Positions 6,969 through 51,875 of a stretch of DNA of 64,000 nt are shown here, piece by piece. The stretch comes from Tubulanus polymorphus (taxonomy: Eukaryota > Animalia > Nemertea). Location of the stretch: positions 4,278,001 through 4,342,000 of the forward strand of contig NC_134031.1 of assembly GCF_964204645.1 (NCBI RefSeq), written 5' to 3'. The notes beneath the pieces are model-generated. The model was not told where the DNA came from. It saw only the letters and a program-made list of their open reading frames with translations, and searched no databases. Each line of letters starts with the position of its first letter. The first letter of the stretch is position 1. The translations under genes were made by a program, and so were the position numbers.

Positions 6969-9455
6969 ATGGCGTCCACGAAAAAGAAACAGTTTCGGAA
7001 ACGAAGACAAGAGTCTTCTAGCAGCGAAGATGAGGAAGAAATGGGCGATCGACCTATGTAAATATGATCTTTTTCATTGTGCCTTTGATTTGGTTAAATT
7101 TTCACGTCGCTGAATCGTTTGGAATTTCACGGTTTTACCGTTTTGAACAGTTTTTTTTAGAAGAAACCTACTTCCGACGAGAGGTGGCAGCACCGGATGG
7201 TGACATATTTCAGTCATCTGTCAAAATTTGATACCCGTCCATGTCTTGATATTCTATTTACAGCCCGAAAGATTCGATTACAAATGATATAAAAGCGTTG
7301 CAGAAATTGAGAAAACGACCAAATGGCGTGAATGTTATTGGTTTGGCATTAGGCAAAAAATTACCAGATAATGAACCAAGGCTGGTGGTAGGCGTTAAAT
7401 CTGTTGTTTTATGTAACATAATAAAAAGAAAATACTGAATTCTGAAATGTGAAAATCTATGTGATTTTAGAACGATCCATTTAAGATGGACACTGGTGGA
7501 ATAGTAGATATGAAAGCGTTGAAAGAACAGTAAGCCTGATTCGTTTATTTGAGAAATTTAAGAAATCTGGTCAAACCTTGCTTACCATGAGCAGAATCCC
7601 TGCAGTGTTTGTGTACAAAATGTAATTATTCTTTAAAATGATTTACCTGATAATTCGTTGTGATTTCAGGGGTAAACTAGCAGATCCTGAGAGTATCGGA
7701 ACCTCCTTCGCGGCAGAGACTAACAGAAGAGATGAGGATGCTGATATGTAAGTCCGAAGTAAAACAAATCGTAAAATGGTTCGGTTTCTTAATTAATATT
7801 TGTCGTATTGACGAAGCAACTCTCTATGTATTCAATTATAGGTTGAAATATGTCGAGAAAGAATTAGCAAAGAAGAAGGGTTTAGTCTCGAAAGATGAGT
7901 CTCCAGAAAAGAAAAGGTTCGCATTTGTTGACAATATTCTTTAACATCTCTTTCATGATAGTATGATGAGAGTTTTATTTAAGAAGATGAATTAACATAA
8001 CATCGATTATAAGTTTAAAACCCACCAAAGTTTGAAAGATTGAAAGCAAATTTTATTTGTCAAAAATTAAAATCCAAAGACACGACAATTTGGGTTTGAA
8101 TTCTTGATAATTGATATTAGCTTTGAATCTTTTAAACTTTGTATATTATAACTTATTAACTATTCTCCACGTCAGAAGTCAAGTGGCTAAACGGCTACAG
8201 GGCCCAATGAAACGCCTTTATTACCACTGCTATCATATATACCTGGTATTTTTTTTCTTCAGCGTAAAAACTGTGAACGACGTATTGTTCGATGTTCCCG
8301 AACATTTACGAGCGACGACCATGAAACGCACCGAGGATATGTTGTCGAATCAAATGTTATCCGGAATACCAGAAGTTGATCTCGGAATTGAGTAAGTCAT
8401 TGAAAAAATAGTAGTCATGATTTATTGTCATAATTCCATGTAAGATATGCTCTTCGGCTTATACATAATGAGAAGCATGAATTGAAAAATGGTAAAACAA
8501 ACAGACATTATAAATAAGAATATTCAAGAATGAGCTATGGTAAAAGCGAGTGTTTTAATTTGAGATTTAAAAGCATCTAAGGATGGAATAAAATGTAATT
8601 GGTAAGGTATCGTATCTCATTCCAAAATGACACAATAGTAACGGCGACGAACTGCTAGTGATAGAACCTGCTGCAAGGTTAAGCCAAATTTTGTAGCGAT
8701 CTGTTTATTTTCGTCACAAGATGAAGAAATGTGTCTATTTTATAGCGCTAAAATACGTAACATCGAACAGACCGAAGACGCCAAACAGAAATTGATTGAA
8801 CTGAAAATGAAGAGAAACAATGAGAAAGTGTCCGCGTTTGTGCCGACTAATATGGCCGTGAACTTCGTACAACACAACAGATGTAAGTAAATCCATCGCA
8901 ACTGAATCGTCTCTTACCGGGAAACTTGGAAGACAAATCTTAGAACAATCGCAATAGAATATCAATCAAATTTCCATCGGATAATAGATTATCACTGATG
9001 TCAAATGAACGTCACTGGTCCCTATTTTGCTGTATTCGCTACAACCTTTTTTGTGCATTTAAAAATCTAATTTTAACCTCAGCTCATTCATTATTGTTTA
9101 AGAGCTTATGAAGTGATTCTATTTTGAATCTGCATGATAAATCAGTTTTCTATGGTAGCCGCTCAATGAGCTAAAATTTGTATTATTTCAGTCAATATCG
9201 ATGATAATAATCCCATATTGAAGAAAGAAGAGCCACCAAAACCGAAAATGCCACGCGTTGGAGATGCGGAATCAATATTTGGTAGGTTACGTAATATTGT
9301 GAGCAATTTGAATAGCTTTTTTGTCAAGTCGGCACCTGTGTCCTCAAGTTTTCGATTCGATTCCAGATCAAGAAGGCAGCAAGAAAAAAGACGGCGAAAA
9401 AGCGACGGATGATTATCATTACGAGCGTTTCAAGAAACAAATGAGAAGATATTGA
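6969..9455 (+). CDS. C9orf78: Splicing factor C9orf78 / telomere length and silencing protein 1 homolog
   Basis: Exons 6969-7057, 7264-7387, 7471-7529, 7670-7747, 7842-7916, 8263-8391, 8746-8882, 9192-9281, 9367-9455 join in frame. Motifs: LQKLRKRPNGV, DPFKMDTGG, FAAETNRRDEDADM, EDMLSNQMLSGIPEVDLGI, FVPTNMAVNFVQHNRF, EKATDDYHYERFKK. Confidence 0.95.
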
Positions 9456-10256
9456 ATCTGATCCGAATTCGACGTATTTAATCGTGCATTATCGCGTCAA
9501 TCGAGTGTAAAGGCTTGATTGTTTGTTTGTCGGAGTAGGGCAGATACCGTTGCTTTGGCATTACCGCCTTGGTCAGGGCTAAAGCTCGGCTCGTTTGTAC
9601 TCGGAAAAGCTGAACTTCGATATATTCGTATCGATACATTATTGTGTTCATGAAAGCAAGGCAGCGTGTCAGACAGTGAAGGTTGTAAATATTGTAAATA
9701 AATTTCGGAAATAATAGATCTGCTAGATGTACTTATTTTGCGATTTTTGATTCTAAATGGCCGGTAGCCGCAGGACTGAATTTACCCCATTTCTGGAAGT
9801 TGTTGGTGTGGTCGTGGTACTACAAGCCACGCGTTATATAGTACTCATTTCAAGTCCACGTTTCAATTAGTCTTTGAAGCGATCCAGTCCATATCGTGTA
9901 ACCTCATTACTCGCATATCCAGCATCTGGAGCCATTTCCACAGTCTCAGGTTGAGACTTAATTTATACAGACATCATAATGAGTTTTCTTTACAAAGACT
10001 TCCCTGATTCGAGAGTATATTCCGGAAGAATATAGAAGAGATGACCACACCTCCGAATGATTGAAGCAGAAAAAGTTCTTTTTTACATTTTCAAAATTTT
10101 TTTTTATTCTAAAAGGCTAAATGAGTACATAATTTATTAGATACAAACGTAGTGTATTAGATATACAGGAGTTGTGACCACTGAATGAGCGTTTATGTAA
10201 ATGAGATACAACCGACTTAACGAATTCAATACAGCCAGCGGTCGATATCATCCTAG

Positions 10257-10339
10257 ACCCAGTTCCACAGTTGTTCGTTTAGTTCATTTGAGTTTTCTAA
10301 TATCTAAGAATTTTAATCCACGTAAGTGGAGCCAGGTCT
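10257..10339. mobile_element. Short MITE (CCAGTTCCAC ... GTGGARC termini)
   Basis: Imperfect terminal inverted repeats; related copy at ~59496-59595. Confidence 0.45.
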
Positions 10340-11293
10340 TGGTTTAATAAGACTCGCTGCTTTGACTCGGTCGGTGTACTCGGCATAGATCTGGTTGTGC
10401 CGTTCTAAATAATACACAATACAAAATAAATATCATATATGTACAGCAAAATACAAACAAAAAATCGTACAAAATTAATAAATTATCAAATATTTTTACA
10501 TAATTTGTTTACAATAAATGTAAATATTTAAATATACATGGAGTAAACTACAAGCTACATGATGACGTAAATAAGTATACAATCTTAAATTCACAGAATG
10601 AATAACTGGCTTCGAAATTACAAGCACTGCAAAAATAACACCACGCACACTCAACATTTTTTTGAAGTTTTAAGTTAATTACATGTTTTTACTTTCGTGG
10701 TAGATTTCATTTGCGTTCCCGTTTAGGAGATCTGAGAAGGGCTTTCGTCTGCGCTACGACTAAAAAGCAAGGGCAATTTTGTTTCGGACATAATCAGACA
10801 TAATAGATGGTTCCCCGATGAATCTCCTCTACGAAGAGTCCCATGATACGAGCAGTTATCTCGTAGGCTAGAATGAACAAGGGGGAGACCTGTCTGATAT
10901 AATTCGTTGCAATTGATTAATACTGACTTAATAATCATGCTATATATATATAATATCTAGACTAGTACTGTCACTAATTAATTATTGGATACATGTATTT
11001 ACATACCTACATACAAGGCGAACGAATTCTCCAGAATTACGTTGTTTTGGATCTAAATCAATTCAACCCCTTTGATGTAGATTATTACTTCTTTTTCGAT
11101 CGTAATAGACGTAGCTAGGGTCATGCAGGTCACACGTATTTTGTCCACACGCGTCGTTTTGGCCGTCAGATGACCATCAACAGTGTCTTTTGCTTCAAGG
11201 CACACGACGGTCAACCTGACTGTCTGTGACGTCATGCGAGTGAACTCGTACGCTAGTCCAGACGACTCCAACAACGATTTTATTTTCTAAAAC

Positions 11294-12600
11294 TTTTCAA
11301 ACTTAACAATTTTTTTATAGATTTAGTAAACTTTTCAAGATGTTAACGATTTATTTCTATAGATCTTTATAGAATTTCTAATGGTGTCAACCTTTCCAAA
11401 CGAATCCATTATGCCGTTTCAGACGGACAGGATTCGAAATTTAAACTTTGAATCGATATATTTTTCTATAGTATTTTCAAACTTAACAATTCAATTATAA
11501 TTTAATATGGATATAAACTTAATAATGTTTTAACGAGTTATTCGGCGGAATTTCTCCCACCAAACAACGATTCATAAACTATGAATTAATATCTTTTTCT
11601 ATAGTATTTTCAAACTTAACAATTCAATTATAATTTAATATAGATATTAACTTTTAAATGTTTTAACGAGTTATTCGGCGGAATTTCTCCCACCAAACAA
11701 CGATTTATTAACTATGAATTAATATTTTTTTCTATAGTATTTTCAAACTTAACAACTACAGTCAAATCCCGCTTAATCGGGATCGGCTTAATCCAGATTT
11801 TATGATATAATTTAATTTGAATATAAACTCTCGAAGTAATTAACAATGTTTTGAAAGATATTCGTCGGAATTTCTCCCGCCGAATAACCTTTCAAAAATA
11901 AACTCTATACTATGTTTATAATTTCTTGATAATAAAATTGTTCAAACTTAACAAATATATCTCTATTTTAAAGATCTATATATTTCAACAACTTAGAAAT
12001 GGTATTTGATAGGGCTAATCAAAAGATGATTCGAAACTATCAAGTTCCATTTACGGAGCTTAAACTCTAAGCTATATTTTTTTCATAGAATATTCAAACT
12101 TAACAATTTTCAACTATATCTTTATATTCAATCTTTAGAATTTATGAACATTTAACGAGCTTTGAAACGGTATTCGAAATTGTCAAAATGACTCGTCATA
12201 ATAACAATTTTCGAATATCATTTCAAAAATAGACTTTATATATGTTTAGATTTTTATATATTATTTCTTTTAAAATTTTAAAACTTAACAATTGTTTTAT
12301 CATAATCTCTATTTGATTATACTCTAAAAATCTCAACAACTATAGTATATCTTAAGAATGGACGCCGGAAAAAGCGATCTACACACCTCTTTTCAATCGG
12401 ATATCATCTTAAAACTACTGAATTATAATCTTTAAATATATGTATTTTTTTTTCTTCTAAAATTCCAAAACTTAACAACATTTTCAGAGAAAATTTAGTA
12501 ATAACTTCAATCAACAACGTTTGAAAACAACAATCGAATCGCCGGGTGTTTGTTTCATCGAAAGAAACATCCAGCAGACATATTCAACAGTCTTTCGAAC
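11294..12600 (-). repeat. Array of 8 units, each a conserved (TT)CAAACTTAACAA motif plus a variable hairpin
   Basis: Motif at ~11298, 11478, 11611, 11744, 11943, 12095, 12280, 12467 (spacing 133-199 bp), with one hairpin per unit. Units 2 and 3 are near-identical 133-bp duplicates. Confidence 0.85.
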
Positions 12601-12720
12601 TTTAACTATATTATCGTTTTATGGTATTTTGATATTTTTCTCTAAGTTATTCATATACGATTTAGAAAAACATATCAACGTTTCAAGTATCTTTTACTTC
12701 TTAAATATATACATATTATC

Positions 12721-13570
12721 AGGACGGATATAAGATCGGACGGAAGGTCTTCTTTGGACGGATTAACTGGACGGGTTGGTTACCTACACTGCAATAGGTA
12801 TCTATTCATTCTACCTTCGAAGAATCCATATCAACCAATAAGAAAGAACATTTGAAATTTGCAAGTAACACCCTTCTTTCTATAGCTGAATGAATCCTTA
12901 AAATAATTGAAATGAATAAACATTTATTCTATGTACGTGGACGGAATAAGATAAATAGGACGGAAATCTAGCACCAATCGATACAACTAACTATATACAT
13001 AATATCTACAGATATTCTTATCACAGAATAGCGCGTTGGACGGATTACGATAAGTCGGGTTTTTCCGGAAGAATCCTGGCCGGACGCTTTCGGAAGATTC
13101 CGGGCAGTGTCGTAGCTTTGAGTGGGCGGAACGCGTAAGGGCTCGTTATGTCCGGATCACGAGAGAGAGGCTCTCGAGTTCCGAACTCGGAAGTTATTCA
13201 TTTCCGTGGGCAGTGATTAAGCTTCTTTCGCGGACGGATCTATTGAAGGGTAATTTGGATGGCAGTTTTTTTCTAAAAAATTTTTTTTGAAATACCCAAA
13301 TTTGTCTAAAAGATTCCAATCATCTTGAAATTTGGGAATTTGAATATTGGACGACCATGCAAAATTAGAACGAGATTATTCAACTGGGTATTTCAATGGC
13401 AGTTTTTGAGTTAAAAGTATAATTTTTCATGAAATAACCCTCAATGGCAGTGATTGGGCTATAGATATATAAGATAAGTCGACTGAGCACTTATCGGCGA
13501 CCTTGGTAGGTGAACCCACCGGAAACACCTAATCGTAACTCAGCGAGATAAGGACGGGCAAGTAAGGGCA
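12721..13570 (-). promoter_or_regulatory. Cluster of miR-184- and miR-34-complementary sites (on a minus-strand RNA)
   Basis: 7x GGACGGA plus 2x GGACGG and 5x GGCAGT(G), all in the same orientation; several also match the miRNA 3' halves. Confidence 0.6.
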
Positions 13571-16418
13571 AAGCCTTCAATACACCACGAGTAATCGAAA
13601 AGTGAATTGCTCGGCTAGAAGTTTTTTTGAAGTAATATTTTTTTTCAGTTTTTTAAAGTTGATTTTGCCCAGTATTGTATTCATATACAAATGTTACGAT
13701 TTGGTAATTGCCCTCTAAATCTGCCTAAATTAATTAGAGATTAACGGTAATAGTTTTTCTACAAAAGACTGGATTCGCCTAAACGGGAAGCATATAAAAT
13801 CTCACCACGATTTTGTTTCGTTTAAAAAACCACCTTTTACCGTATATAACTAATGAAATAATCAATCATTTCAAACTAAACCTGAGCATTGGAGTAAATA
13901 TTGAATACATAGACAAATTAATTACTAATACGTATTTACAATTGCATAAGTACAGCTGCGCAGCTTTCTACAGGCAAAATAACCAACGTTATGGTATTTC
14001 AGATCTGCGAAAGATATGATGTTTTGTTAGGTCTACTAAATGCGCACCGTTGATATAACATTGATATGAATGATATATTGGCGCGCCGAGGTTACACACG
14101 ACATAAAAAAAAAACTAGCAATTGTACTTCGCTTACGCGCAGGCATGAGCCCCCGGAGGTTGAGTTTGTTTTTCAATGTGGATAAAATCATTTATCTTTT
14201 GAAAACCTCTGACCGGGCCCAGTCACATTGCAAACTAATTAAAAACTATCTATCTAACAGTATTTACATATTTTCAGGCCAAGTAAAATAGGATTTTTGC
14301 GAATGATTTACACTCTAATAGAAAGCGTGATAGAATTATTATTTATCGTGATTATAGATTATTCGATATTAATATATGTTTTTCACCACCATTATCCAGG
14401 GCAAGTTTCATTAGCACCTCTGCGATAATAAATTAATATAACGCCTTTATACAAAAGCCATAATGTGTATAGCGAAATTAGAGGTGGTTTCTGAAATTGT
14501 ACCCGAAATTTAATACGTGAATGTTTGCATGACAATAACATATTGTCGTAGACGGGGAAGGGAATTTAGCCGATGGTTTCCTGAGGAAATTTGTCCCGCT
14601 TTTACACACGGTTGAAGGATTCTAGTTACCATGGGCCGAATCGACCTATTGATGCGCTATATTTGATGATGAAGTGTCCACGAATCGTCGCGTGTCAGCG
14701 CACTTTATACCGCGAGAGCTTCAATACAATGGCTGTTTACATGACAAAGATGTATATGAGTTTATACCGTACCGATACTTGAGAAGGTGTAACTATGGGA
14801 ATTGCGAATCGGGGTCGACATAATGACTTGACTCAGCTCGTCGTCTGCCGTCGTCGCCGGGCGCACTTCCTGGTTTTTATTCGGAGGAATATCATTCTCT
14901 CGCCAAATATCCGTGCTTGGTGGAGACGATTTTTTCGATAGTCGTTATTTCGGTTTTTCAGATCAATTCAAAAGAAGGCGACGAGTTTCGTTATGAAAAA
15001 TCTGTAAAGATAACACGTAGAATCGTTATATTTATGTTAAAAGAATGTGACGGAATTCTTCGTTTTCATCCGAAAAAAATATTTACGTAGATTATTTCAA
15101 AATGTTAATTAACAACAATTAATCGACCATTCCCTACGATTGATAATCAATCATGGACTCGTAATTCGAATATTCGTGGGAAATATCTAAGAACAAACAA
15201 TGACAGTCAATAGAAAAACGGGTTTCTTTTAGAAACGAATCATGATTTTGATTTTTGAGCTCAACGTCGTAAATAACGGAACGTATATTGTGATCTCGTC
15301 CGTTCTAGACAAAACCGATCCTTAATGGAACGAAATATTTCTGTTATTGTAAGGTAAACTCCCTATAAAGCATTTCCCATTCATGAAATTACGCCGGCCT
15401 ACAACATAAATCAAACATAATGTTGAATGAACCATGGTAACCGGTGCCCGACTCGCTGCCCAAACTTGAATCACACGTCGCATTCCAAACACTTGAAATT
15501 GTTGAACATGAATAGTACACTATGCCTCAGCAAAAACTCGGACAATTTCTAAGAATATTCAAAATGAAGTGTTTTTACTAGAGCTCTGGGGACAAACGAC
15601 GACATCGACCCTAATCGTGGGGCTCTCAATTTTCCTTTAGTTTTAATTGCACGCTTTATTCAAACTATTTGGAATAAAGTCTATGTTATTTCTTACAAGA
15701 GATGCATTCCGCGATATAAAGGTGCTCAAGCAGAATTAAATTCATCACTATCCTTCGAACATTTCTTTCTAGTTTATCAAGTGATACTATTATCTCTAAT
15801 GAAATTAAAATCATCGGAAACATTTTTGACTATACAACATTCTTTATACTGATTCATACTTTTATGAAAAGTGCACTTTTGATAGAAGTTCAAACGTACC
15901 TTCGGTTTGAATAAAAAATGGTAATAGTTCTTTTTTCGGGAGATGCGAAATCGAACGTCCGTCGGAGCGCATCAGTTGATATTGATTTTGAAAGAGCTTC
16001 GTTAGTAAATCTCAGTACCTGAAACGAAATATATCAAAATCAATTAAGTTGTTGTTCTTTAATCAAGTTCTAAGCTTCTTAGAACCCAGCGTTGAAAATA
16101 AAATGGACAGGATTGACAAATATTCCATCTAAATTGAATTACCGTGCAAAATTAATTTAATCGAAAGTTTATGTTACTTTAACATATAAGAACTGACATT
16201 TACATTTTCGTAAAGGGAATAATTTCCCGTTTGTTATCAGTAAAACAGTTGATATGTACATACCTGGCAAAAACTGAGGTGTTGGTTAGGATCCGGGTTG
16301 AAAACGGCTCCTGTCCCCCGGCAGGTTGATGGACCTGTCACGGGAGACAGGCGAGCCGGCCGTCTGCGCTCGCGACTGGAACGAGTCGTTGTGACACTTA
16401 GACACAGTAGGTCATCAC

Positions 16419-16572
16419 TATTTATATGGGACAGCAACCAAACAGGTTCTGAGCACGCATATTCGAAGTGAGGACTTGTTGCCAAGGGCTTTTGTTGGGT
16501 TAGCGAGAATCCGCAGGGCGCATTGAAAAGGCACGCGTGCTCGGGCGGGAGAGTCTTTAGAATGGTGATTGG
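16419..16572 (-). promoter_or_regulatory. Pol II core promoter (TATAAATA, GC box, CCAAT)
   Basis: Minus-strand TATAAATA at 16426-16419, GGGCGGG at 16543-16549, CCAAT at 16572-16568; splice donor ~160 nt downstream of the TATA. Confidence 0.65.
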
Positions 16573-17785: not shown

Positions 17786-19589
17786 TCATTTGGATTTCTT
17801 GAGTAAAATGTGAAAAAGCGCTGCCAAACCCGCAGCCAAAATGGCCAACAAGGATGAAACGATAAAAACTAATTGCGTGCAATCATTTCCGTAACAATCA
17901 AAATTAGGTAACAATGGTGAGGTAGTTACATTGGAATAAGAGGTCATATTCGCGTAACTAGTTACCACATGTGAATCATAGACTTTACCGTAAATCAACA
18001 CGGTAACGTACAAAACAATAAATTCGACCATTTTCCCAACCCCGAAATGTAACCCCAAATGATCGTTACCGTAGACCTCGGCAAGAATAACGGGAACGAG
18101 GGTATAAGTAATACTGATAGCCGAGCCTAGTAAAATATTACTTATGATTACAGCAGCTAACGAACGCACGAAAAAAACCAGTACGATAAAGCCTAGTGCA
18201 CACATTGTGTAAGCGAACATAACGAATACATCTCTCGCTACACGTTTGAACAGGTAATCGGAAAGTGGACCGATCAAAACACGCATTACGAGTCCCGATA
18301 GGGTGTTAATCAGCACGATAACAGACACGTATTGGACGAGATGCACGGATTTCAACGTAGGTCCGATGTTGGTTACAAACATGGCCATCAGTCCGCCGAT
18401 TATGGAGAACCCCCACACAAGTGCGTGATAACTCGGATATCCTAATACGCTCAGAAAACCGCAAGCCGTCGATTTATTCGTATACGCCTGTTCAGCGGGA
18501 TGGTGCATCGGGCGTACGCGGACTTCCTCGCCGTCGTCGCTGCTATCGGAAGGAGAAACATCGGGAGAACCGGGAATTACACCCGCAGAACCCGGAATAA
18601 CATCGCGTGAACCGGTTTTATCGACTGGCGAACCGATACCGCCCTCATTATCCGTTAATCTTATGTGTTCATCGTTCGTTTCGTCGGGCGGTAACTCGTG
18701 AAAAAATAGCAACGACAAAATTCCCGTCACAGCCCCGAGTATCCACATCAATAAGATATAACCTTGCAGATCTTGTTTCGCTTCGTGTTTCAGGTGTCCA
18801 CGAACGTAGGCGCCGTTGTAGACGGCGGTGAAAACGAACAAACTCAACTGAAACATCGTGTCCATCACAGCAACGACTTTGGCGTTGTGACGGTTCGGAA
18901 AATTCCGGATGTTCGTTAACAACGCGGTTGTGTAGAGGTACGAAAAACCGTGGGCTGAAAAAAAAAGCGAAGATATCTTTGAAAGTATGCAGCATATGAA
19001 CACGGATGTCTTTATAAACGAATAGATGGTTTTTTCTATTTACGCAAACTTGTCAACAATAGGGAAATTCTGTTACCCGGTAATCAAATTTTCACGGAGT
19101 CAAAGACAGGAGCCAACCAGGATGATTTTAACATTGAAGCTTTTATCGAAACTTACTGATTTAGTTCATCCAATAGGTATTGTATTGAAATTATATATTC
19201 TATTAACTGCTTTAGGTTTACTTTAAACGTATCAGCATATACAGATCAAAATCCAGAGTAAACTGAACATTCATCGTAGATGTAAAATTCATTCATTCAC
19301 CGCATCGCACACATTGTGCAGCACATAATCAGTGAAATAAACAACACAAATCGATTATTACGATAGGGCCTACTTCACTTACCTAAAATACAGAAATAAA
19401 ATGCCATCAAGCCGTAGTGCTGCGAATAAAATACTTTCGCGGAGAATGTTGAATAGACAAGTCCGTATCCTAAGGTAACCAGTATGAGACCGATAGCAGA
19501 GGTAATCGTTGGCCCAGTTTTATCGAATATAAAACCAGAAAAAATTTGTGCACCCAATCCAAACATCTGAGCAGTAGATATCATTTCAA
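17786..19589 (-). CDS. Major facilitator superfamily transporter, MCH1/nodulin-like; first exon not located
   Basis: Exons 19383-19589 and 17786-18954. About 11 hydrophobic helices, MFS motif A variants GFIFDKTGP and GPLSDYLFKR, family-typical C-terminal CYGNDC. Confidence 0.8.
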
Positions 19590-21275: not shown

Positions 21276-22069
21276 TGCATTCAGACAGGACACATATCAG
21301 TGCCGGTCGACTCACTGATTCAACAACAAAATTCCGTAAAAATCTTCAGCATGTTGAAGTTGGCCAGTAATACGTAGAACTAGAACTAGAACTGGTGACC
21401 AATCAATAAATTTTGAATTGAATTAGAATTGTGACGGAGTTTAACGTTAATTACCATTCGTTTGAGTCATACTGAACGTCTTTTTCAGCGCCTGGCTATA
21501 GACGCCGAATACAAAAACACTTCCAGATATAAGTTTTACTATACAGCCCACGGTAAGACCGGTATACCGAAGAATCTTGCGATATTTCGGATTTTTCTTC
21601 AGGTAGGCCGCCATCTTATATCTCCACGCGACCGTGACCTTGTAGTATTTTTAGACGCTGCCTTAACCGCGTCGCCATTTCCTCGATCCTACCACCACGC
21701 ACCGGCATTTTTTCACTGAGCTGGTTTTCAGAGGTTTGTATACGCGAAATTCAGTAATTAATACTCTTAATTAGTAAATTAATCGATTTATTGTATTTAG
21801 GGATGTTTGCAGGGTTTTCTTCAGGCGCTTGGACCTCGATATTAGCCGTCATCGAAACTAATCAATTTTTATTCTTTTTTCTCTTTTTTAGCCTTTCATC
21901 ATGGAAAGGTAGCATCCTTGTTTTATATTTTTTTCTTTTTTTTATATTTTTTTTGCCCGTCCTTGATCAGACGACGTTGAAGGACTGACTGTGTGTGCGC
22001 GTACGTGCGAAAAGCTTCCGATCTCATCATCGCCGCCTCCGAGACTTGAGTGAGCCGCCACCGAGAAAG

Positions 22070-23107
22070 ATGAGTCTGCACAACGAAAACTGCAACTTAA
22101 TCGTGAACTACCTTCCTCAAACGTTGACCGACGACGAGTTCAAGTCGATGTTTAGCACGATCGGACTCGTGAAAAGTAGCAAAATAATCCGCGATAAGAT
22201 TACCGCGTACAGCTACGGGTTCGGATTCGTCGAGTTCGTCAAGCCGGAAGACGCCCAAAAAGCGATATGCACGCTCAGCGGTCTTCAGTTACAGAACAAA
22301 ACGATTAAAGTCGCGTTCGCGCGTCCGCCCGGCGAGGACACGAAAAACACTAATCTCTACATCCGTGGACTTCCGCATTGCATGACTCAGCAAGGTTTGG
22401 AAGAAGAGTTCCGTTCGTACGGCGGAATCGTCCAGTGTAAAGTGCTGACGAACGAATCGGGCCAGTCGAAAGGCGTCGGATTCGTCTTGTTCGAAAAGAA
22501 AGATTCCGCGGAGATCGCGTTGAAAGAAATGAACGGCAAAACGTTGATGGGCGCCGCCGAACCGCTACATATCAAATTCGCCGAAGACAACGCCAAGAAG
22601 GTCAGAGCGCCATCTATGCCGTATCATCATCACCATCCTTACCAGCCGATTCCGCGCGCGCCGTACGGTTGCGGAAGCGGGTACAACAGCGGCCCGCCCG
22701 GTCCCGTTCGCAACCAAGGCAACCGTTTCAATCGGTTCAACCCGATGTCGAATAGCTACAACGGTTCGAACGGCGCCGGCTCGATGGCGACGCCGGGCAT
22801 CGTCGCGCCGCCAATGAACGCGCCGAATTCGACGAACGCCGAAGGCCACGTTTTGTACGTTTACAACGTCGGTACGCACCCCGACGATCACATGATCTGG
22901 TCGTTGTTCGGCACGTACGGAATGGTGTTGAAAGTGAACATTATTCGCGACCACACGAAAGGCATCTGTAAAAATTACGGATTCGTCACGATGGCCAACT
23001 ATAACGACGCGTGCGAGGCGATCAACGCATTGAACGGCACGTACTGTCTCGGTAATCACCCGTATCCGTTGCAAGTGTCTTTCAAAACGACCAAGGCGGA
23101 AAATTAA
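22070..23107 (+). CDS. ELAV/Sex-lethal-family RNA-binding protein, three RRMs, intronless CDS (345 aa)
   Basis: RRM1 NLIVNYLPQ...SYGFGFVEF, linker FARPPGEDTKNTNLYI, RRM2 KGVGFVLF, hinge RFNRFNPM, RRM3 LYVYNV...KNYGFVTM...LQVSFKT. First in-frame ATG at 22070. Confidence 0.92.
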   Translation: MSLHNENCNLIVNYLPQTLTDDEFKSMFSTIGLVKSSKIIRDKITAYSYGFGFVEFVKPEDAQKAICTLSGLQLQNKTIKVAFARPPGEDTKNTNLYIRGLPHCMTQQGLEEEFRSYGGIVQCKVLTNESGQSKGVGFVLFEKKDSAEIALKEMNGKTLMGAAEPLHIKFAEDNAKKVRAPSMPYHHHHPYQPIPRAPYGCGSGYNSGPPGPVRNQGNRFNRFNPMSNSYNGSNGAGSMATPGIVAPPMNAPNSTNAEGHVLYVYNVGTHPDDHMIWSLFGTYGMVLKVNIIRDHTKGICKNYGFVTMANYNDACEAINALNGTYCLGNHPYPLQVSFKTTKAEN

Positions 23108-33494: not shown

Positions 33495-35866
33495 TCAGAA
33501 ACCTGGTATAACTCGACCTCGTTTTTTGGCCGTGTCGATTTTCCGTTTCAGATTCTGATCTTTTCTCGCGCGGATGTTTTTCGTGCGTTTATCTTGTTTC
33601 TCTTTCATGCGTTTTTCCGTCGCCGACGTTCGCTCTTCCCATTTCTTTTTCCGCGTGTTCTTCATTTTCTCCTTGCGTTTCAACGCGCGTTTTAACATTT
33701 CCGGATCGTCTTTCACTTTCAAGCCTTCCGCCTTTTGCAACGCTTTCTCCCACTGATTTTTCTTTTCGAGTTTCTCCGCTTTTTCGGCCGCGTCGGAATT
33801 TTTCAAATCCTCAACGGTTTTTCGTTTCTTTTCGACTTTTTCTAACAACGTTTTGTAGTCTTTTCCCGATAGACTACTTTTCTTTTCTTTCTCGCCCGCA
33901 TCTCTAAAATCGAACTTACTGAACACCATTTTCTGTTGGTTGTAAATCGGTTTGACAGCCGTTCCGTTTACAAGTTTTTTATTACCCCCGGGAGACCCTA
34001 AAACATCAGTCAAAGCGCTACCTTTCACTTTACTTTTTTGTTTCTCTATTTTACGCTTTATTTTATTTTTCAGTTTGCTTTGTTTTCGCTTAAGTCGCTT
34101 CATTTCAACGGTTTCACTGTTGGATTTTCTTTTACCTGAAAAGGAATCGAGACAAAACTAAATATCATCGAAGCGCCCCACATTGCATATATGCTAAACA
34201 GAACAACGAATCAGTACATACTTTTCAGTTCCTGTAGTCTTTCGTGTAACTTCTGTCTGGCCTCGTCTAACGATGTCGAAACTACAGCTCGAGGTAGGGC
34301 TGTAGATTTTTTATTCGTTTTATTCTTCTGTTTTTTATTCTTTAGTTTAGTGACTGTAAAGACAGCAGAAAAGAAACCTCATGAGCTATAATCGCTAGAA
34401 AAGAGTTGGGGGAATGGGGGAAACTAAAATGGATTTAGTGCATTCTATAAGGAGGACCTCCGCTGTCGACTGTGCCAAATACATTGGATTTTAAAGTGTA
34501 TTTGTACATCGTATTTGTATGACAAACCTGTCGACACTATATGAGGTAGAGAACGGTTTTACCTCAACAGCTTAACTGCGCAGAGTGACCACTTTTATTT
34601 GATTTGCTAATCTCCAGACTATTCCCTGACATTTAAGTTGTTTTCCCTAACTTGATCTGCTAAGAATCCAATCAATTAATACAGTCAAATACGTAAAAAA
34701 ATAGAAGGAAACTGTTTGATTTATGCACAATCAAACTATCTTAACAATATTCCCCCATTTTACCCTGATCTTTTAGCTTTTTTTTAAACCAAATTCTCTG
34801 TTTTGAAGAAAAGAAAATTTGATTTCCAGATAAGTGGCCACCCTGCTGCGGTAGTTTGGGGTTAAATTAGTTCATTTTAAAAATAATTCAACAATGTCGT
34901 CACTGAAACCGATTCCAGGAACGAGTTTCTCATTCGCAGCTTTAACATTCTGTTTTAATAACTTACAATTATCGCCATCATTATCCGGTTCATCGACTTC
35001 CATGTCTTCACCATTAGAGTCACTATCAACAGCGTTATTCACATCCGATACTAATTGCGAAATACAGGTTTTATTATTCGGGTCGTATTTCATTCGTTTC
35101 AGTTGCGATTTCGCCGAAGTCGGTTCCTTTTTCGCCTTCTTCGCATTTGGCATGGTTTCTGTAACGACATTCGTAACAAGATGTCACTTTTCTTGCATGT
35201 AAAATCAGGCTCCCGACACATTTAGTCGTTCCTGGATATAACGGGTTTTAAAGGAGAAAATTTCAATTTCGAGAAATTGTCCGCACCACCTTCATATCCC
35301 AATTGCTGAAGACTCCTCCAAAATTGGTCCTGTTTATCCGTTATCTACTGCACAACTTCAAACTAGACAAACATTCTTACAGGTAATAGCCTATTTCTCA
35401 AAATTGAAGGAGTTGAAAGGAGTTTGAGGCATTTTGCTCAAATTTAAGGAGTTTGAAGCACCTTTAAAAGCATTTTCAGTTTTAAACTGAAATTACTTTT
35501 AAAGGTGCTGACTTTAGAACAAGTGCTTTTAATGAATCAAGGAGCCATAGGGACCCAGTAAATAGTCTAAGGTGAATGCATTTGTTTGATGAGATATGAT
35601 TATGATTGACATTAACAAGCAAATGTTTACACGAATATTGTCTATGACAGATATGAAGAAATTCATCAGCAAATCATATTTCATTGTTGTGATTTAGTTT
35701 TCTAAATCATACCATCCTTTAGCTTGGCTTTTTTCATTTTTTTCTCCTGAAACGCTGCTCGCGCGTCGCTTGAAAAATAATTTTCCGGCGGAATCATGTC
35801 GACCATCTTGGTGAAAAAATTGCTGTCGACTTTCATTGCCGATCGTTTATCACCGTTGCCAGCCAT
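33495..35866 (-). CDS. SURF6: Surfeit locus protein 6 (nucleolar, Rrp14 family)
   Basis: Exons 35713-35866, 34967-35158, 34222-34353, 33495-34135. Motifs: MVFSKFDF, WEKALQKAEGLKVKDDPEMLKRALKRKEK, KKKWEER, KKRGRVIPGF; N-terminal Rrp14-like DMIPPENY. Confidence 0.93.
34581..34845. mobile_element. CAGGGTGGCCAC-TIR MITE, 5-bp TSD
   Basis: CTGCG flanks both ends. Confidence 0.75.
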
Positions 35867-36440
35867 TTTCTGTATATGCGAGCACTGGCACCTGAAAATG
35901 GAATGAAAATGAAAATATCGCGCCAACCCTTGTGGCTGAGTTTTTACATTATTCAACTCATCCGTGCCAGCTACCTTCGTTGCGAGGCAATCAAACCCTG
36001 GCAAGTGAGGATGTTTTTCTCCTCGTCATTCTTCTTTTATATTTTTTCAGAATTTTTTTGCAGTAAAAATTGTTAAATTCTCGTTAAAATTTTTAAAATG
36101 GCCAAATCGAAATATACTAGTGATTGTTCGGATCTTTTTTCCTTGTTGGAAGGTCCACAAAATATTCTATTTATGAGAACGATTTTATCTGAATTGATAG
36201 ATAAATTATCAATAAATCTACAAATTAACAAGTCAAATGATTACTAAAAGATTAGGCTAAAAAAATGATACCTTGTTTCTGCTGTGATGATAAAAATATG
36301 AATTAATTGGAAATATATTGGGGAAAATCTTTATTTATAACCAGGTGGAACGGTGGTCAAAATTGCCATCTTAAGTATTATTTTTAAACTACGATATTTG
36401 AATTGGCGAATCAAAATGAAGTATTGACATTTTTTAGTAT

Positions 36441-36602
36441 GGGATCATTCATTGATTACGTACGCATAAAATTTGAATTTGTCAACCCCTCCTCCCCCTC
36501 TGTACGCAAAATCGGCCATTTTTTCATATATATTAAGCATTACAGTACGCAATTGCACTGACCCCCACTCCCCTAATGCGTACGCAATAAATGAATGACC
36601 CC
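36441..36602. mobile_element. PIF/Harbinger-like MITE
   Basis: Same TIR family as 4815-4976; TAT TSD. Confidence 0.8.
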
Positions 36603-37261
36603 TATCCCAATCAGATTCAGATGCCAAGTCAGCCACTTCTTTCCTCGCAGAGGCGGAGTTTATACAGACTACAAAATTAACACGTTGCCTTCAATTCGGT
36701 TCTTTTTTTGCGCAATTTCTCGTCGAATCTACGAACCTTTAAATAACTAAGACGATTTAATGGGTGTTTTGTCTTTATCATAAAACATTTCGGAGAGATG
36801 ACCGCAAATAGAATTGCATTTTCAAAGAATTTAGTAGCTATATCGTTTCATCCATTCCATGCTTTCAAAACGTGCTAAATAGCGCAACAAACTTATGATT
36901 AATCAGTTGAAAACAAATTCCAATTAACTCTATTGAGAAAATTTAGCGTTCACTTTCGAGAGTGAATGGTTTGCAAAAAAGTATAGTTTATGTACCATTC
37001 CACGTTGTATACGGTGTTCATTTCGAAGAATTTTCTTCCATAACAAACATTTGCCCTTTCCAAGAATTTTAGTCCTTGTAGTACAGGCGCACTCGGCGTG
37101 GGATCCGAGCTGAATGATAATTAAAACTATGGTTAACGCCATTGCGTTAATTATTTGATGAGCTTACAAATTTCCAAGAAACTCTCTTAACAAGAGTTCA
37201 GTATTTACACTTTGACAGCATACGTGTTGATATTAACTATCAAATCAGGCATAGCTGGTCT

Positions 37262-37524
37262 AAGTTAGTTAACCTAATCGTTGGTGGTACGCTTTTTATA
37301 ATCGGATGGGCTTATTCCAACGTGGTATGTGGTTTGTGAAAATATCCGATCGTGAAACTAAACCACAGACTGGTTACTGACTAAGCTGGTCTGTCAGTTC
37401 CTTAGTCAGTAACCTGTCTGTGGTTTAGTTTCACGATCGGATATTTTCACAAACCACATACCGTACCACGTTGGTATAAGCCCATCCAATTATAAAAAGC
37501 TAACCACCAACGATTAGGTAACTA
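37262..37524. mobile_element. Two adjacent inverted copies of the 9-bp-TSD MITE
   Basis: 37262-37383 (TSD AGCTGGTCT) and 37403-37524 (TSD TCAGTTCCT). Confidence 0.85.
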
Positions 37525-40500
37525 TCAGTTCCTGAACCTGAAACCAGACACTTGATCCATGACACAAAGAATATCTAAAACTGAACAAAGAGAATGGAAA
37601 CAATTAACTACTAGTTTTTTTGGGCTATTTTATGATTTTTTTATTATTATGCACACGATATGTATACAAATTGTGTACATACACACACAACTTTCGGTGT
37701 CATTTACATAATATATTTATATAATAAAGCAAATATACAGTCAGTTTACAACCGAAGACAACAAAACCATTGTATAATAATTATAGTACAACGAGAACAA
37801 AGAGCAGTGTTGTGTGAACCCTCACCATCTTTAGTTCTAAAGTACAGACACATTTATAGGCATTGAACGTACTCTTTTTAAAGCCAAGCCAATCGGAGCG
37901 CGGTAACTAATGTTGCGCTTATTACGAAGATGATATATCTATTACCGAACATTATTTATAATAACGCGGGTGCATCCAATTTTGCAGTTCTGAAATGAGC
38001 TGATTTGAACGTCGTAATTTTTACAACAAGCCTAGAAAAAACGAAAGATTTGGCAAGTTAACAGCCCTACTGTTAGACAGCAGTGACTTCAATTACACAA
38101 TTAACAACTTTCAGTATACAGTACACCTCGCCTTACTAATGGACTTTTCAGTAAATTTATCAAAACTGAAAGCATTTTAATTTTCTGATGTATTTGCCTA
38201 TCCTTTAATTCAGACTTTGTTTCATACCAATTCTGCCCGTTCCAGTTTGTCCGAGTTAGCAGGCTAGGTTAACTGTACTCGACTCCATTCGCTACCTTTT
38301 AAAAAATAACCACTTAATGAACATGTACCGGTATATGACATCCTGTGAAAAACAGTATATATTTAAGCCCTAACCCATTTCATGTCGCTCGGATACAACT
38401 CGTGAGTGAAATGCCACAACTCCTTTCAGGAGTATTCTTATTTTCAAAACGTCTATTTTTCTCTTATCAAACTACACAATTCAACAAGCAATAACGAATT
38501 TCAATGAGCACCATACTTCCTAACAATTTAAATGTTAAGGAAAAAGATCAATATTAAATTCATCTGTCTATGTTTACCGGTAAGTTAAAAAGTACGCCCG
38601 ACTTTTTAACGAAAACTAGCATATGAGACATAGTCCTGTTTTTTTAATAATAAAATGTATATACCATTCAATAACTATAAACGTTTATAATATTGATGCC
38701 GATGTTTACGATGTCTCAGATTTAGTCTTTCCCGGGCATCCAAACGGCTACATAAGTAACATTTTTATCACATAATACAAATCAACGAAATCCAAATATA
38801 CAAAACGTTGCATAAGTTTAAGCAGCCTATGTATCAAAACTGAAATTTGGCAAATAAAATAGATATCAAATCTTGTCCTCTTTCAGTGCTTTTTTGATAG
38901 TAGACAAAAACACTCATTATGTTTACAATAAATTATGTACCCTGGTAGGTATGTACTTATTGATAGCAGGCCGTAAAATCGAAACTTTATTTCTGGCAAA
39001 CCTACGTGAAAAGGTTTGTGATACCTGAACTATTTTGGTGGTTTCAGTTACTAAAAATAGAATTATTAAATGAAGAACATAATCTCATATATACCTACTG
39101 GTATTCATTCCTCAAGACTGTGATACGATATCTGTTTCTGTAACAAACGTAAGACAGCGGCGGATCTAGGGTCTGATTCAAGGAGGGTTGCCCCTACAAT
39201 TGGGCACATCATGAAGGGCAGCCCGAAGGAAAGCTCATTGTGAAATATTTAAAACTTATTTTTGGAAATACAGAGAACAAGCTTATGAATCTAAATGTTT
39301 TGAGGTATCGGTTTGATATTTTCAATTTTCCGTAGAATTTCAGCGCGCCCCCTGCACCCTCCCCTTGGATCTGCCCCTGTCGGAGACAAGCCTTACTTAT
39401 AATCATTAATTGGTCATTAATACATTGGCACCATGATAAGTTATAAAAATAACTACAAACTACAAATTACGAGCTAACAAAGCAAAATAAAATCCATTCT
39501 TTCATACACGAAGACACTGTGAAAATGACGATGAATTCACGAAATATATCTTCAACAAAAACATCAATCGACGGGCAAATACTGTTAACAGTTGCAGGTG
39601 AAGAAAAGCAGTTCGATTGAATGCATTTCTCGTTCAAAAATACGAACTTCTACCAGTGGTATCGATGATAATTTCAGGACGACTCTACTCTAGAGTAATT
39701 TCATTCAAAGATCGCGATAATTCTGATAATAATCAATAATAGCGCAAATAAGGCTAAATTTCTAACAATTAAATCACTTGATAACTACTTAACAGTAACC
39801 GGAATGGATGGATTTTGAATCCTCTTTTTTTTTTCTTTCTTTTTAATACCATGAATATGAATAACAGTTCAATAATTTGAATAATGATTGGCACTATGAT
39901 GAAAATGTACATATATTTTATGTAAAAAAGCGTTTAAGAAAATATGCGTAATTTTTTTTCTTCACTTCTCCAACGAGTGAACAACGTTTTGAGCTATACA
40001 AAATGAAATGAAAATTTCAAAACAAGCTAACTAGTAAATGCTAGACTAGTGAGTACTTACAGTACTTCCGATACACACACGCTAAACTAGTACCAGATTT
40101 ACACATATCATGATGAATTCGATCCAACGCGTTCAATCCTCTGAACAACCGAAATTTAAAGAGAGCTATATCCTCTGATCGTGAAGTAAATATGAGTAAC
40201 CAAATACTAAATACTAATGGATTTAATCCATCAATTCGTAAAAAGAAAAATTGATTGCGGATCGGGAAAAGGAGTTATTGTATATCCATTTAACCGTATT
40301 CACTTTTCAGTTGAAGCCCTCCACCCTCATTTAGTTAGAATAACAACAATATTTTAAGACAATGTCGATGACACAACGAAAAAGATTAATTACATTAATT
40401 ACGATAAAAAAATTTCTTTTTAGCGGGGGTGGCAAAACTGATTTGTCTGTGTATCCACATAGTCCTGTTACAACAAACCCCCATATACAGTGAATGCATC

Positions 40501-40909
40501 AACCAAGATTTGAGTCTAACAATTAAATCGTCATTTCATAGCAAAAGCTTTCACAGACAAATGCATCATTGTAAAATCAATTTCAACAAGGCCACCAATT
40601 TTTCAAGGATATATTTCCAGATCAGTTATCACACGAAAAATGAGACAGATTTTTGTAGTTCAACACTTAATACATCAACACTTAATCCCAAGGTTTATTT
40701 TGACTCCTAGGGGCAAATTTTAGCACAGTAGTACGATCGCATTGTGTCGCGATTAAAACACCAAAACAAATCCAACCAAAATAACACTTCCGGTCGAGGC
40801 CGACGCGTAAATGATATTCGATTAAAAATAATAGTTTCATAAACCTTGATATCACTTTTTTCGATAAACGCAAAGATACATAGCGAATTGATCTAACTCA
40901 AAACCAGCA

Positions 40910-47266
<6,357 letters not shown>

Positions 47267-50648: not shown

Positions 50649-51875
50649 AACTAGGGGTCCAGGGACACCATGGAAAGTGGTTTCAAATGCTCAACAATCT
50701 AACAATTTCAATATTAACCCCCTGGTGACCATATACAAAAACCAATGATCTTGAAACTCACCACAATCATAGAATATGTCAGCAGCTATGATTTTTTCAA
50801 TTGATTGTGATAACAAAATATGCCTCGTCACCAATTTAATATGGAAATACTAAGTTATTCTACTATTCAACGCCCCCTAATAACCATATGCAAAACCCAA
50901 TGACCTTGAAACTCACCACAATCATAGAACATATCATGAACTACAACTTTGCAATTGATCATGGTAACAAAATATGCTTAGGTACCAATCTAATAAGGAA
51001 ATACTAAGTTATTCTACTATTCAACACCCCTGGTGACCACATAGAATCACAATTTACTTAAAACTCACCAGAATCATAGAGGATGTCATGAGCTACAACT
51101 TTGCAATTGATTGTGGTAACAAACTATGCATAGGTACGAATATAATATAGAAATACTAAGTTATTGTATTATTCAATGCCCCTGGTGGCCATATACAAAA
51201 ACCAATGACCTTGAAACTCACCAAAATCATAGAACAGGTTATGGGCAACAACTTTCTTATTGATTATGGTTACAAATTATGTTTAGGTATCAATATAATA
51301 TGGAAAAACTTTTTCCCACCTACGAATGAGCACTGATGACACCAAGATTGCTGCCAATTGCGCCACAATTGGCTGATCAAAAATGCTGGTCTCAGGTATA
51401 AAATATCGCTTTTCAAAGAATACCCATCACAAATTGCAATGAGAAATGGCAAACAAGTAGGAAGCTACAGGACTCAGAATTCGGGCCAAATTTGACATTT
51501 TTGGACACTAAAAAGGTCATAGGACGACCATCTTGAGTCCGATCGACCCAATTTTTCTTATGCTGATGGGCCCTTGGGGGATTCAAATATATACGAAAGA
51601 TCAAGGTAATTGATCGAAGAGTCTTCAAAATTTCCCTCAAAAATGTGTAAAAAGTGCTGATTTTGGCGAACAACAATGGCTGCCAGTCGGCCATCTTTAT
51701 TCTGACAGGGCCAGTTTTTGGGCTGAAGATGTGTCTAGGGTAGATACATAGGCCTATGTAACCAAATATCAAGACATTATATTGAAGCGTCTTCAAAACT
51801 TCCCAAAATAACTGGATTCCGTCTACGGCCGGACGAACAGACGGACGAAAAGTGAACGCAATAGCCCGCTGTGAC
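50649..51875 (+). mobile_element. Non-autonomous Helitron/Helentron-like element with an internal ~153-bp tandem array
   Basis: Four units at ~50719, 50873, 51026 and 51179; GGAC/GACG microsatellite and GAACGCAATAG end. Related copies at ~52200-53290 and ~60975-61615. Confidence 0.6.

What the first reader, a model, noticed from the sequence alone, without database searches (positions are those of the whole stretch)
11294..12600. Repeat-spacer-like array: near-invariant 12-14-nt motif separating sequence-variable RNA hairpins
Eight copies of (TT)CAAACTTAACAA (minus: UUGUUAAGUUUG) at 133-199 bp spacing. Each unit holds one hairpin: 11401-11436, 11537-11568, 11670-11701, 11849-11897, 11997-12052, 12161-12227, 12352-12412, 12519-12600. 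Hairpins are usually preceded by TTAACGA/TCAACAA, followed by AAACT, and end 42-55 nt from the next motif. Most hairpin sequences are unrelated, yet pairing is kept. Units 2 and 3 on the minus strand form GUUGUUUGGUGGGA-GAAA-UUCCGCCGAAUAAC, 14 bp with four G-U pairs and a GAAA tetraloop. Unit 4 converts several of those wobbles to Watson-Crick pairs, which suggests selection on minus-strand RNA structure. Possible roles: a protein-binding scaffold like NORAD units, a polycistronic small-RNA precursor, or motif-driven mini transcription units. A plain satellite would not conserve structure while losing sequence.
Basis: partly seen in the sequence, partly recalled or inferred. Interest (0 to 1): 0.85.

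Follow-up and report, generated by a model that had tools for sequence, protein, structure and literature searches.

The report
Hairpin array with Brat-type binding sites
A ribbon worm carries a one-off run of eight RNA hairpins, each flanked by two short sequences that match the binding site of the stem-cell and embryo regulator Brat, so it may be a natural RNA docking platform or decoy for that protein, though neither its expression nor the binding has been shown.

Summary
The array is real and no second copy was found in the Tubulanus polymorphus genome. It has eight invariant 11-nt motifs whose 5' flanks are only 31-37% identical, and eight hairpins that fold better on the minus strand (z -2.0 to -6.4; 23 G-U pairs against 8). 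All 16 sites fit the published Brat consensus WYGUUD, and the invariant motif begins with UUGUUAA, Brat's top in-vitro 7-mer. The worm's Brat RNA-binding domain is 91% identical to the fly's, with the three tested contact residues kept. The array lies 120 nt downstream of miR-184/miR-34 site clusters on a probable non-coding transcript. Best reading (0.45): a NORAD-like multivalent module for Brat. Rivals: cis-repression element, Boule, small-RNA precursor, DNA element. No Rfam match and no paper on a Brat decoy were found. Earlier scan notes cover the same host RNA and a Pumilio-site repeat elsewhere in this genome; none names Brat.

The parts
11270..12620 (-). Whole array: eight diverged tandem units. 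On the RNA each reads: site A, A-rich tract, AGUUU-like element, hairpin, site B, AU-rich linker, next site A
12468..12478 (-). Site A, invariant UUGUUAAGUUU (first of 8)
12281..12291 (-). Site A
12096..12106 (-). Site A
11944..11954 (-). Site A
11745..11755 (-). Site A, directly beside the MITE remnant
11612..11622 (-). Site A
11479..11489 (-). Site A
11299..11309 (-). Site A (last of 8)
12511..12517 (-). Site B, unit 8 (UUGUUGA)
12333..12339 (-). Site B, unit 7 (UUGUUGA)
12152..12158 (-). Site B, unit 6 (UCGUUAA)
11985..11991 (-). Site B, unit 5 (UUGUUGA)
11840..11846 (-). Site B, unit 4 (UUGUUAA)
11663..11669 (-). Site B, unit 3 (UCGUUAA)
11530..11536 (-). Site B, unit 2 (UCGUUAA)
11343..11349 (-). 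Site B, unit 1 (UCGUUAA); 52 nt from hairpin 1, after a second small hairpin
12519..12600 (-). Hairpin 8 (32 bp in the MFE fold, 5 G-U; outer part poorly defined)
12352..12412 (-). Hairpin 7 (24 bp, 5 G-U)
12161..12227 (-). Hairpin 6 (29 bp, z -6.4; reference for the shared outer stem)
11997..12052 (-). Hairpin 5 (22 bp; folds about equally on both strands)
11849..11897 (-). Hairpin 4 (21 bp, GAAA loop)
11670..11701 (-). Hairpin 3 (14 bp, 4 G-U, GAAA loop)
11537..11568 (-). Hairpin 2, identical to hairpin 3
11401..11436 (-). Hairpin 1 (no detectable sequence link to the others)
11442..11755 (.). Most recent duplication: 133-nt period, 2.4 copies, 93% matches
11756..11801 (+). 45-nt end of a dispersed MITE (about 170 nt when whole, ends TA-CAGT, at least 18 other copies); the rest of the element is lost
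12722..13452 (-). Context: clustered seed matches to miR-184 (8 sites, 12722-13238) and miR-34 (5 sites, 13103-13452); seeds recalled from memory
   Evidence: lead from s1-511876 and s1-511913
10100..16450 (-). Context: probable host transcript. Donors at 16263 and 15899, acceptor at 14005, AATAAA at 10108, six Pumilio elements between 13940 and 10445, no ATG ORF over 71 codons in 9500-14005. Predicted from sequence only

Best explanation
The array is an RNA module on the minus-strand, probably non-coding transcript that also carries miR-184, miR-34 and Pumilio sites. It grew by tandem duplication of a unit of about 150 nt. Selection kept two short single-stranded protein sites per unit and a hairpin between them, while the linkers drifted. 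The sites fit the RNA motif of the TRIM-NHL repressor Brat, so one RNA could dock up to 16 Brat molecules and act as a decoy or assembly platform, as NORAD does for Pumilio. Folding of each hairpin sets the sites about 40-80 single-stranded nt apart and may recruit a length-tolerant double-stranded-RNA binder. Shown here: repeats, conservation contrast, folding, strand bias, motif fit, conserved Brat orthologue. Inferred: transcription into mature RNA, Brat binding, decoy function, role of the hairpins.
For: Site A is 100% identical among independent units against 31-37% in its 5' flank; site B is 84% against 30-43%. There are 16 U(U/C)GUU(A/G)A sites against 0.6 per 1250 nt in background. With unit 2 and the MITE removed, WYGUUD occurs 24 times against 9.7 in shuffles, and UUGUUAA 8 times against 0.6. 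Published Brat site: WYGUUD (PMC5785226); RNAcompete consensus UUGUUAA (PMC9070667); core UGUUA flanked by U (PMC4460960). All 16 sites fit, and site B varies only at the Y and D positions; the DAZL motif fits 9 of 16. The Tubulanus Brat NHL domain is 255/281 identical to PDB 4zlr; R875, F916 and N933, needed for binding in the fly (PMC13245067), are identical. Minus-strand folds hold 23 G-U pairs against 8 on the plus strand (p 0.005). All 8 differences between units 2 and 3 avoid the hairpin and both sites (p 0.02). Six Pumilio elements lie in the host against 1.3 expected. No consensus donor lies between the miRNA-site cluster and the array.
Against: Brat reads 6-7 nt and does not explain the invariant GUUU tail of site A or the AGUUU elements (15 against 4 expected). 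An AU-rich 11-mer has a fair chance (my estimate 5-30%) of holding the top 7-mer of some known RNA-binding protein, and site B may descend from site A. Counts in a tandem array are inflated by common descent. Predicted accessibility is only about twice background; some A sites, and the B sites of units 5, 7 and 8, may be paired. The brat gene's own downstream 7 kb shows no site cluster, so there is no internal positive control. No similar array was found near C9orf78 or ELAV2 orthologues in four other spiralians. Compensatory changes between units are few and depend on a hand-set register.
Confidence: 0.45

Rival explanations
1. Same Brat-type sites, but acting in cis: the array is a strong repression or decay element in the long 3' region of its own RNA (a target, perhaps an mRNA for a small peptide), not a decoy.
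For: miRNA, Pumilio and Brat sites together are typical of repressed 3' UTRs (PMC5785226), and eight Brat sites repress a reporter (PMC13245067). A short ORF of about 40 codons could span the predicted 14773/14004 junction (read; not joined or searched).
Against: 16 regularly placed sites plus hairpins exceed what repression needs. No ORF over 71 codons lies in 9500-14005. The repeat architecture parallels NORAD, which resists decay by its ligand (PMC4947167).
Confidence: 0.15
2. A protein-binding module for another GUU-reading protein, such as Boule (DAZ family) or an ELAV protein, or an unknown factor that reads all 11 nt of site A.
For: GUU triplets are doubled (53 against 27). Site A holds two GUU cores and fits UGUU(U/A), the DAZL motif; Boule is pan-metazoan (PMC7445011). 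An ELAV2 gene lies 10 kb away.
Against: UGUU(U/A) fits only 1 of 8 B sites. ELAV proteins prefer longer U runs (own knowledge). I did not look for Boule in this genome.
Confidence: 0.15
3. A polycistronic small-RNA precursor (young miRNA or hairpin endo-siRNA cluster) in which a conserved lower stem and flanking motifs guide processing of variable upper stems.
For: The outer stems are the conserved part and the apical parts vary. With flanks, units 6-8 can reach 38-45 paired positions. The G-U-rich folding is one-stranded.
Against: Units 2/3 have 14 bp and unit 4 has 21 bp, yet their flanking sites are intact. The long extensions are weak AU pairings. There is no Rfam miRNA match, no shared seed, and several loops are only 3-5 nt.
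Confidence: 0.12
4. A DNA-level feature: an old minisatellite or transposon-derived repeat, with the motif kept by chance, by conversion, or as a transcription-factor site (plus strand has Sox-like AACAAT).
For: Tandem origin is plain, a MITE end sits in unit 4, and ordinary satellites elsewhere in the genome also contain UUGUUAA.
Against: Neutral decay would not leave 11 invariant nt beside flanks at random identity or favour G-U on one strand. The unit matches no transposon; only the 45-nt insert recurs.
Confidence: 0.1
5. Eight mini transcription units, each driven by the motif as an upstream promoter element (as for snRNAs, Y/sbRNAs or nematode 21U-RNAs) or ended by it as a 3' box.
For: The motif lies a fairly fixed 42-55 nt upstream of each hairpin on the minus strand.
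Against: None of 62 genomic copies of the 14-nt motif lies near a U2 or U6 gene (exact matches only). The motif is at chance level genome-wide. No T-run terminator follows the hairpins on the minus strand.
Confidence: 0.03

Closest known systems
NORAD lncRNA (mammals; PMC4947167)
   Same: Units from old tandem duplication; short protein sites and hairpins kept while linkers drift; about 16-17 sites for a translational repressor; Pumilio elements in the same RNA.
   Different: The repeated site is Brat-type, not a Pumilio element (0 PREs inside the array). Units are 133-199 nt, not about 300. Hairpins are longer and vary in length. No sequence relation; binding, abundance and conservation are unshown.
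Brat binding site / hunchback Nanos response element (Drosophila; PMC4460960, PMC5785226)
   Same: All 16 sites fit WYGUUD, and nine are the top 7-mer; the orthologous protein keeps the contact residues.
   Different: Known sites are scattered in mRNA 3' UTRs and, in the NRE, adjacent to a Pumilio site. Here they are arrayed two per unit around hairpins, and the Pumilio elements lie outside the array.
miRNA clusters and Drosophila hairpin-RNA (endo-siRNA) tandem loci (own knowledge)
   Same: Tandem hairpins with G-U pairs on one strand of a non-coding transcript.
   Different: Stems of 14-32 bp, no shared mature arm, and invariant single-stranded flanks instead of conserved arms.
roX-box/stem-loop repeats and Xist A-repeat (own knowledge, not tested)
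   Same: Repeated short motif plus hairpin forming a multivalent protein platform in a lncRNA.
   Different: Those are nuclear dosage-compensation RNAs; there is no motif identity or Rfam match here.
CRISPR repeat-spacer arrays
   Same: Only the look of a constant motif alternating with variable segments.
   Different: Animal locus, 11-nt motif, paralogous rather than acquired spacers, variable length, no cas genes.

Membership tests
NORAD-type protein-decoy lncRNA | Repeated units from tandem duplication with conserved short sites and hairpins | tested here: met
NORAD-type protein-decoy lncRNA | Many consensus sites for one RNA-binding protein, far above chance | tested here: met
   16 Brat-type sites against 0.6 per 1250 nt
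NORAD (the gene family itself) | Pumilio elements at the core of each unit | tested here: not met
   0 PREs in the array; 6 elsewhere in the host
NORAD-type protein-decoy lncRNA | Array present in an abundant, cytoplasmic, non-coding RNA | tested here: inconclusive
   No long ORF and no donor before the array; reads unavailable
NORAD-type protein-decoy lncRNA | Protein binds, and loss of the RNA increases repression of its targets | not testable with these tools
   Needs CLIP or pull-down and knockdown
NORAD-type protein-decoy lncRNA | Conserved across related species | tested here: inconclusive
   No array near neighbour-gene orthologues in Lineus, Liolophura, Lamellibrachia, Pomacea, but gene order is mostly not kept and no close relative was reachable
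Brat binding site (BBS) | Sequence WYGUUD | tested here: met
   16 of 16
Brat binding site (BBS) | Brat orthologue with R875, F916, N933 in the same genome | tested here: met
Brat binding site (BBS) | Site single-stranded | tested here: inconclusive
   Median unpaired probability 0.13-0.24 against 0.05-0.16 overall
miRNA cluster | Stem of about 35 bp in every unit | tested here: not met
   14 bp in units 2/3 and 21-32 bp in the others without flanks; weak extensions in 4-8
miRNA cluster | Match to a known family, or mature/star reads | tested here: inconclusive
   No Rfam match; small-RNA reads unavailable
snRNA-type mini genes | Same element beside U2/U6 genes | tested here: not met
   (exact 14-mer only)
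Transposon internal repeat or satellite | Unit recurs elsewhere in the genome | tested here: not met
   Only the 45-nt MITE end recurs
CRISPR array | Unrelated spacers of constant length | tested here: not met
   Paralogous hairpins, 133-199-nt spacing

The most novel reading that the evidence does not exclude
A natural lncRNA decoy for a TRIM-NHL repressor: one invertebrate RNA that titrates Brat through 16 hairpin-spaced sites and, through neighbouring modules, miR-184, miR-34 and Pumilio. It would be a NORAD-like design evolved independently for a different protein.
Probability: 0.35. Interest if true: 0.8.

Novelty: new variant of a known kind. Interest (0 to 1): 0.62.

Why it matters
NORAD was described as the first lncRNA with many conserved sites that regulates an RNA-binding protein's targets (PMC4947167). 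My search of the library found no RNA decoy for Brat or another TRIM-NHL protein (one keyword search in an incomplete library). Brat controls neural stem-cell differentiation and maternal mRNA clearance, and its RNA binding is essential in flies (PMC13245067, PMC4460960). A natural Brat decoy would show that this lncRNA design arose more than once and would give a way to find such RNAs in non-model animals by motif-plus-hairpin periodicity. It is directly testable with the fly protein, whose NHL domain is 91% identical.

Tried and rejected

Later genome searches were run without fetching loci, and loci L060-L079, sent in the same batch, were not used. The background is therefore the window plus about 85 kb of loci already in hand, a non-random sample.

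Spliced models: these were not joined. C9orf78 was searched by one exon, and the possible small ORF was not searched.

Led nowhere: Rfam, tRNA scan, bacterial promoter scan (73, not applicable), Lineus MFS and own MFS contig look-ups, synteny loci, MAFFT alignment of hairpins (68, misaligned), automatic arm anchoring (65, wrong for units 5 and 7), paper search for the motif.

Considered and dropped: miRNA seed site (no conserved seed recalled fits, and the invariant part would face positions 9-13); U12 branch point or micro-introns (no consensus); snRNA 3' box (wrong spacing, not near U2); integron attC or CRISPR (animal locus); LIN-41/TRIM71 tri-loop and Smaug elements (loops not conserved); Musashi, Mei-P26, ARE and CPE motifs (not enriched); the zinc-finger gene at 43-46 kb as a hunchback control (no sign of being hunchback).

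Full report
Source and setting. The window is C7:4278001-4342000 of a 268-Mb animal genome. Its MFS gene is 100% identical to a Tubulanus polymorphus protein, a palaeonemertean ribbon worm. The array lies between a plus-strand C9orf78-like gene (about 6970-9455) and a minus-strand MFS gene (17786-19003), with ELAV2 at 22070-23107. The minus strand between 16450 and 10100 has two good donors, an acceptor at 14005, a poly(A) signal at 10108 and no ATG ORF above 71 codons in 9500-14005. It holds eight miR-184 and five miR-34 seed matches at 12722-13452 (seeds from memory, lead from s1-511876 and s1-511913) and six Pumilio elements against 1.3 expected. The array begins about 120 nt after the last miR-184 site, with no consensus donor between them.

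The observation. Eight exact copies of the 11-mer stand at the stated places. Genome-wide the 11-mer is at chance level (496 hits). Searches for pairs, for the two-site combination and for the 14-mer found no second array, and a DNA search found only a 45-nt piece elsewhere. That piece is one end of a dispersed MITE sitting next to the motif in unit 4, and it explains the 199-nt spacing. All eight hairpins beat shuffles on the minus strand, while only five do on the plus strand. Minus-strand folds contain 23 G-U pairs against 8 (p 0.005), so the structure looks selected as RNA on that strand, though a G+U-rich strand bias could contribute.

The hairpins are not unrelated spacers. Hairpins 2-8 form a chain of sequence similarity, mainly in the outer 17 bp, and only hairpin 1 is unlinked. 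In a hand-set register against unit 6, unit 5 has C-G to U-A, unit 7 has U-A to C-G, and several U-G pairs become U-A or the reverse, but other changes break pairs. Covariation is therefore suggestive, not established. Loops are not conserved.

What is conserved. Among independent units site A is 100% identical, its 5' flank 31-37% and its A-rich 3' flank 54-62%. Site B is 84% identical against 30-43%. The eight differences between the young copies 2 and 3 all miss the hairpin and both sites (p 0.02). Short islands of invariance in scrambled linkers are what protein-binding sites look like, and are not what a decaying satellite gives.

Which protein. The published Brat site is WYGUUD (PMC5785226), and the RNAcompete consensus of the Brat NHL domain is UUGUUAA (PMC9070667; PMC4460960). 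Site A starts with UUGUUAA in all eight units. All eight B sites fit WYGUUD and vary only at the two degenerate positions, whereas the DAZL motif UGUU(U/A) (PMC7445011) fits one. The genome has a Brat orthologue on C5 whose NHL domain is 255/281 identical to the fly crystal construct. R875, F916 and N933, each required for binding (PMC13245067), are unchanged. Limits: Brat does not explain the GUUU tail or the AGUUU elements; a chance match to some protein's motif is not negligible; C at position 2 is reported as lower affinity; predicted accessibility is modest; and the brat gene's own downstream region has no site cluster.

Mechanism. Most likely the folded array presents up to 16 Brat sites about 40-80 single-stranded nt apart, separated by stems that act as spacers or bind a shape-reading partner, on an RNA that also holds miRNA and Pumilio sites. 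It would then titrate or assemble repressors as NORAD does for Pumilio (PMC4947167). I put this at 0.45; the same sites acting in cis at 0.15; another GUU-reading protein at 0.15; small-RNA precursor at 0.12; DNA-level or neutral repeat at 0.10; mini genes at 0.03. Taken together, some protein-binding RNA module has about 0.75.

Comparison with what is known. There is no Rfam match even at E 5. By architecture it works like NORAD, but it is not a NORAD member: there are no Pumilio elements in the units and no homology. It fails the tests for CRISPR, snRNA-type genes, a transposon repeat and a uniform miRNA cluster, though units 5-8 alone could still be processed. No array was seen near neighbour-gene orthologues in four distant spiralians, which says little because gene order differs. 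One keyword search found no Brat decoy in the literature. Earlier scan notes describe the same host RNA and another Pumilio-rich repeat RNA in this genome; a word search found none naming Brat.

Noticed in passing
window 11756-11801; L002-L010: End of a MITE family of about 170 nt with TA-CAGT ends, at least 18 other copies in the genome; the remnant folds into its own small hairpin and abuts site A without changing it.
   Followed up: partly
window 14821-13926, minus: A possible ORF of about 40 codons across the predicted 14773/14004 junction of the host transcript; the donor is weak; not joined or searched.
   Followed up: no
window 11053-11274 and 10690-10890, minus: GC-richer blocks after the array with an ORF of 60-73 codons and weak splice-like ends; exon status unknown.
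   Followed up: partly
window 34747-43517, minus: Twelve U(U/C)GUU(A/G)A sites over 8.8 kb downstream of a C2H2 zinc-finger gene, about three times background; possibly a long 3' UTR under Brat control.
   Followed up: partly
window 21995-23107, plus: Intronless three-RRM ELAV2-type gene; it is also intronless in Lineus and Liolophura, and lies on the same chromosome as C9orf78 in Liolophura.
   Followed up: partly
window 50712-51310: Unrelated 152-nt tandem repeat, 3.9 copies, 80% matches; also a (TA)n tract at 44676-44834 inside the zinc-finger gene region.
   Followed up: no
G000:C5:4177738-4180821 (L015): Brat orthologue whose NHL domain is 91% identical to Drosophila, in one long open frame of 787 codons.
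   Followed up: yes
L056:23417-24700 minus (Liolophura); L058:8805-10000 plus (Lamellibrachia): Eleven Pumilio-element matches within 1.3 kb near the C9orf78 gene in each of two distant species; may be simple TA-rich repeats; not inspected.
   Followed up: no
L059:21035-25922 (Pomacea): An MFS_1 gene lies next to C9orf78 here too, but in the other orientation; orthology untested.
   Followed up: no
G000:C7:13975223-14013011; C9:11049268-11056704: Tandem arrays of U2 genes (1.8-kb period) and U6 genes (about 1.1-kb period).
   Followed up: no
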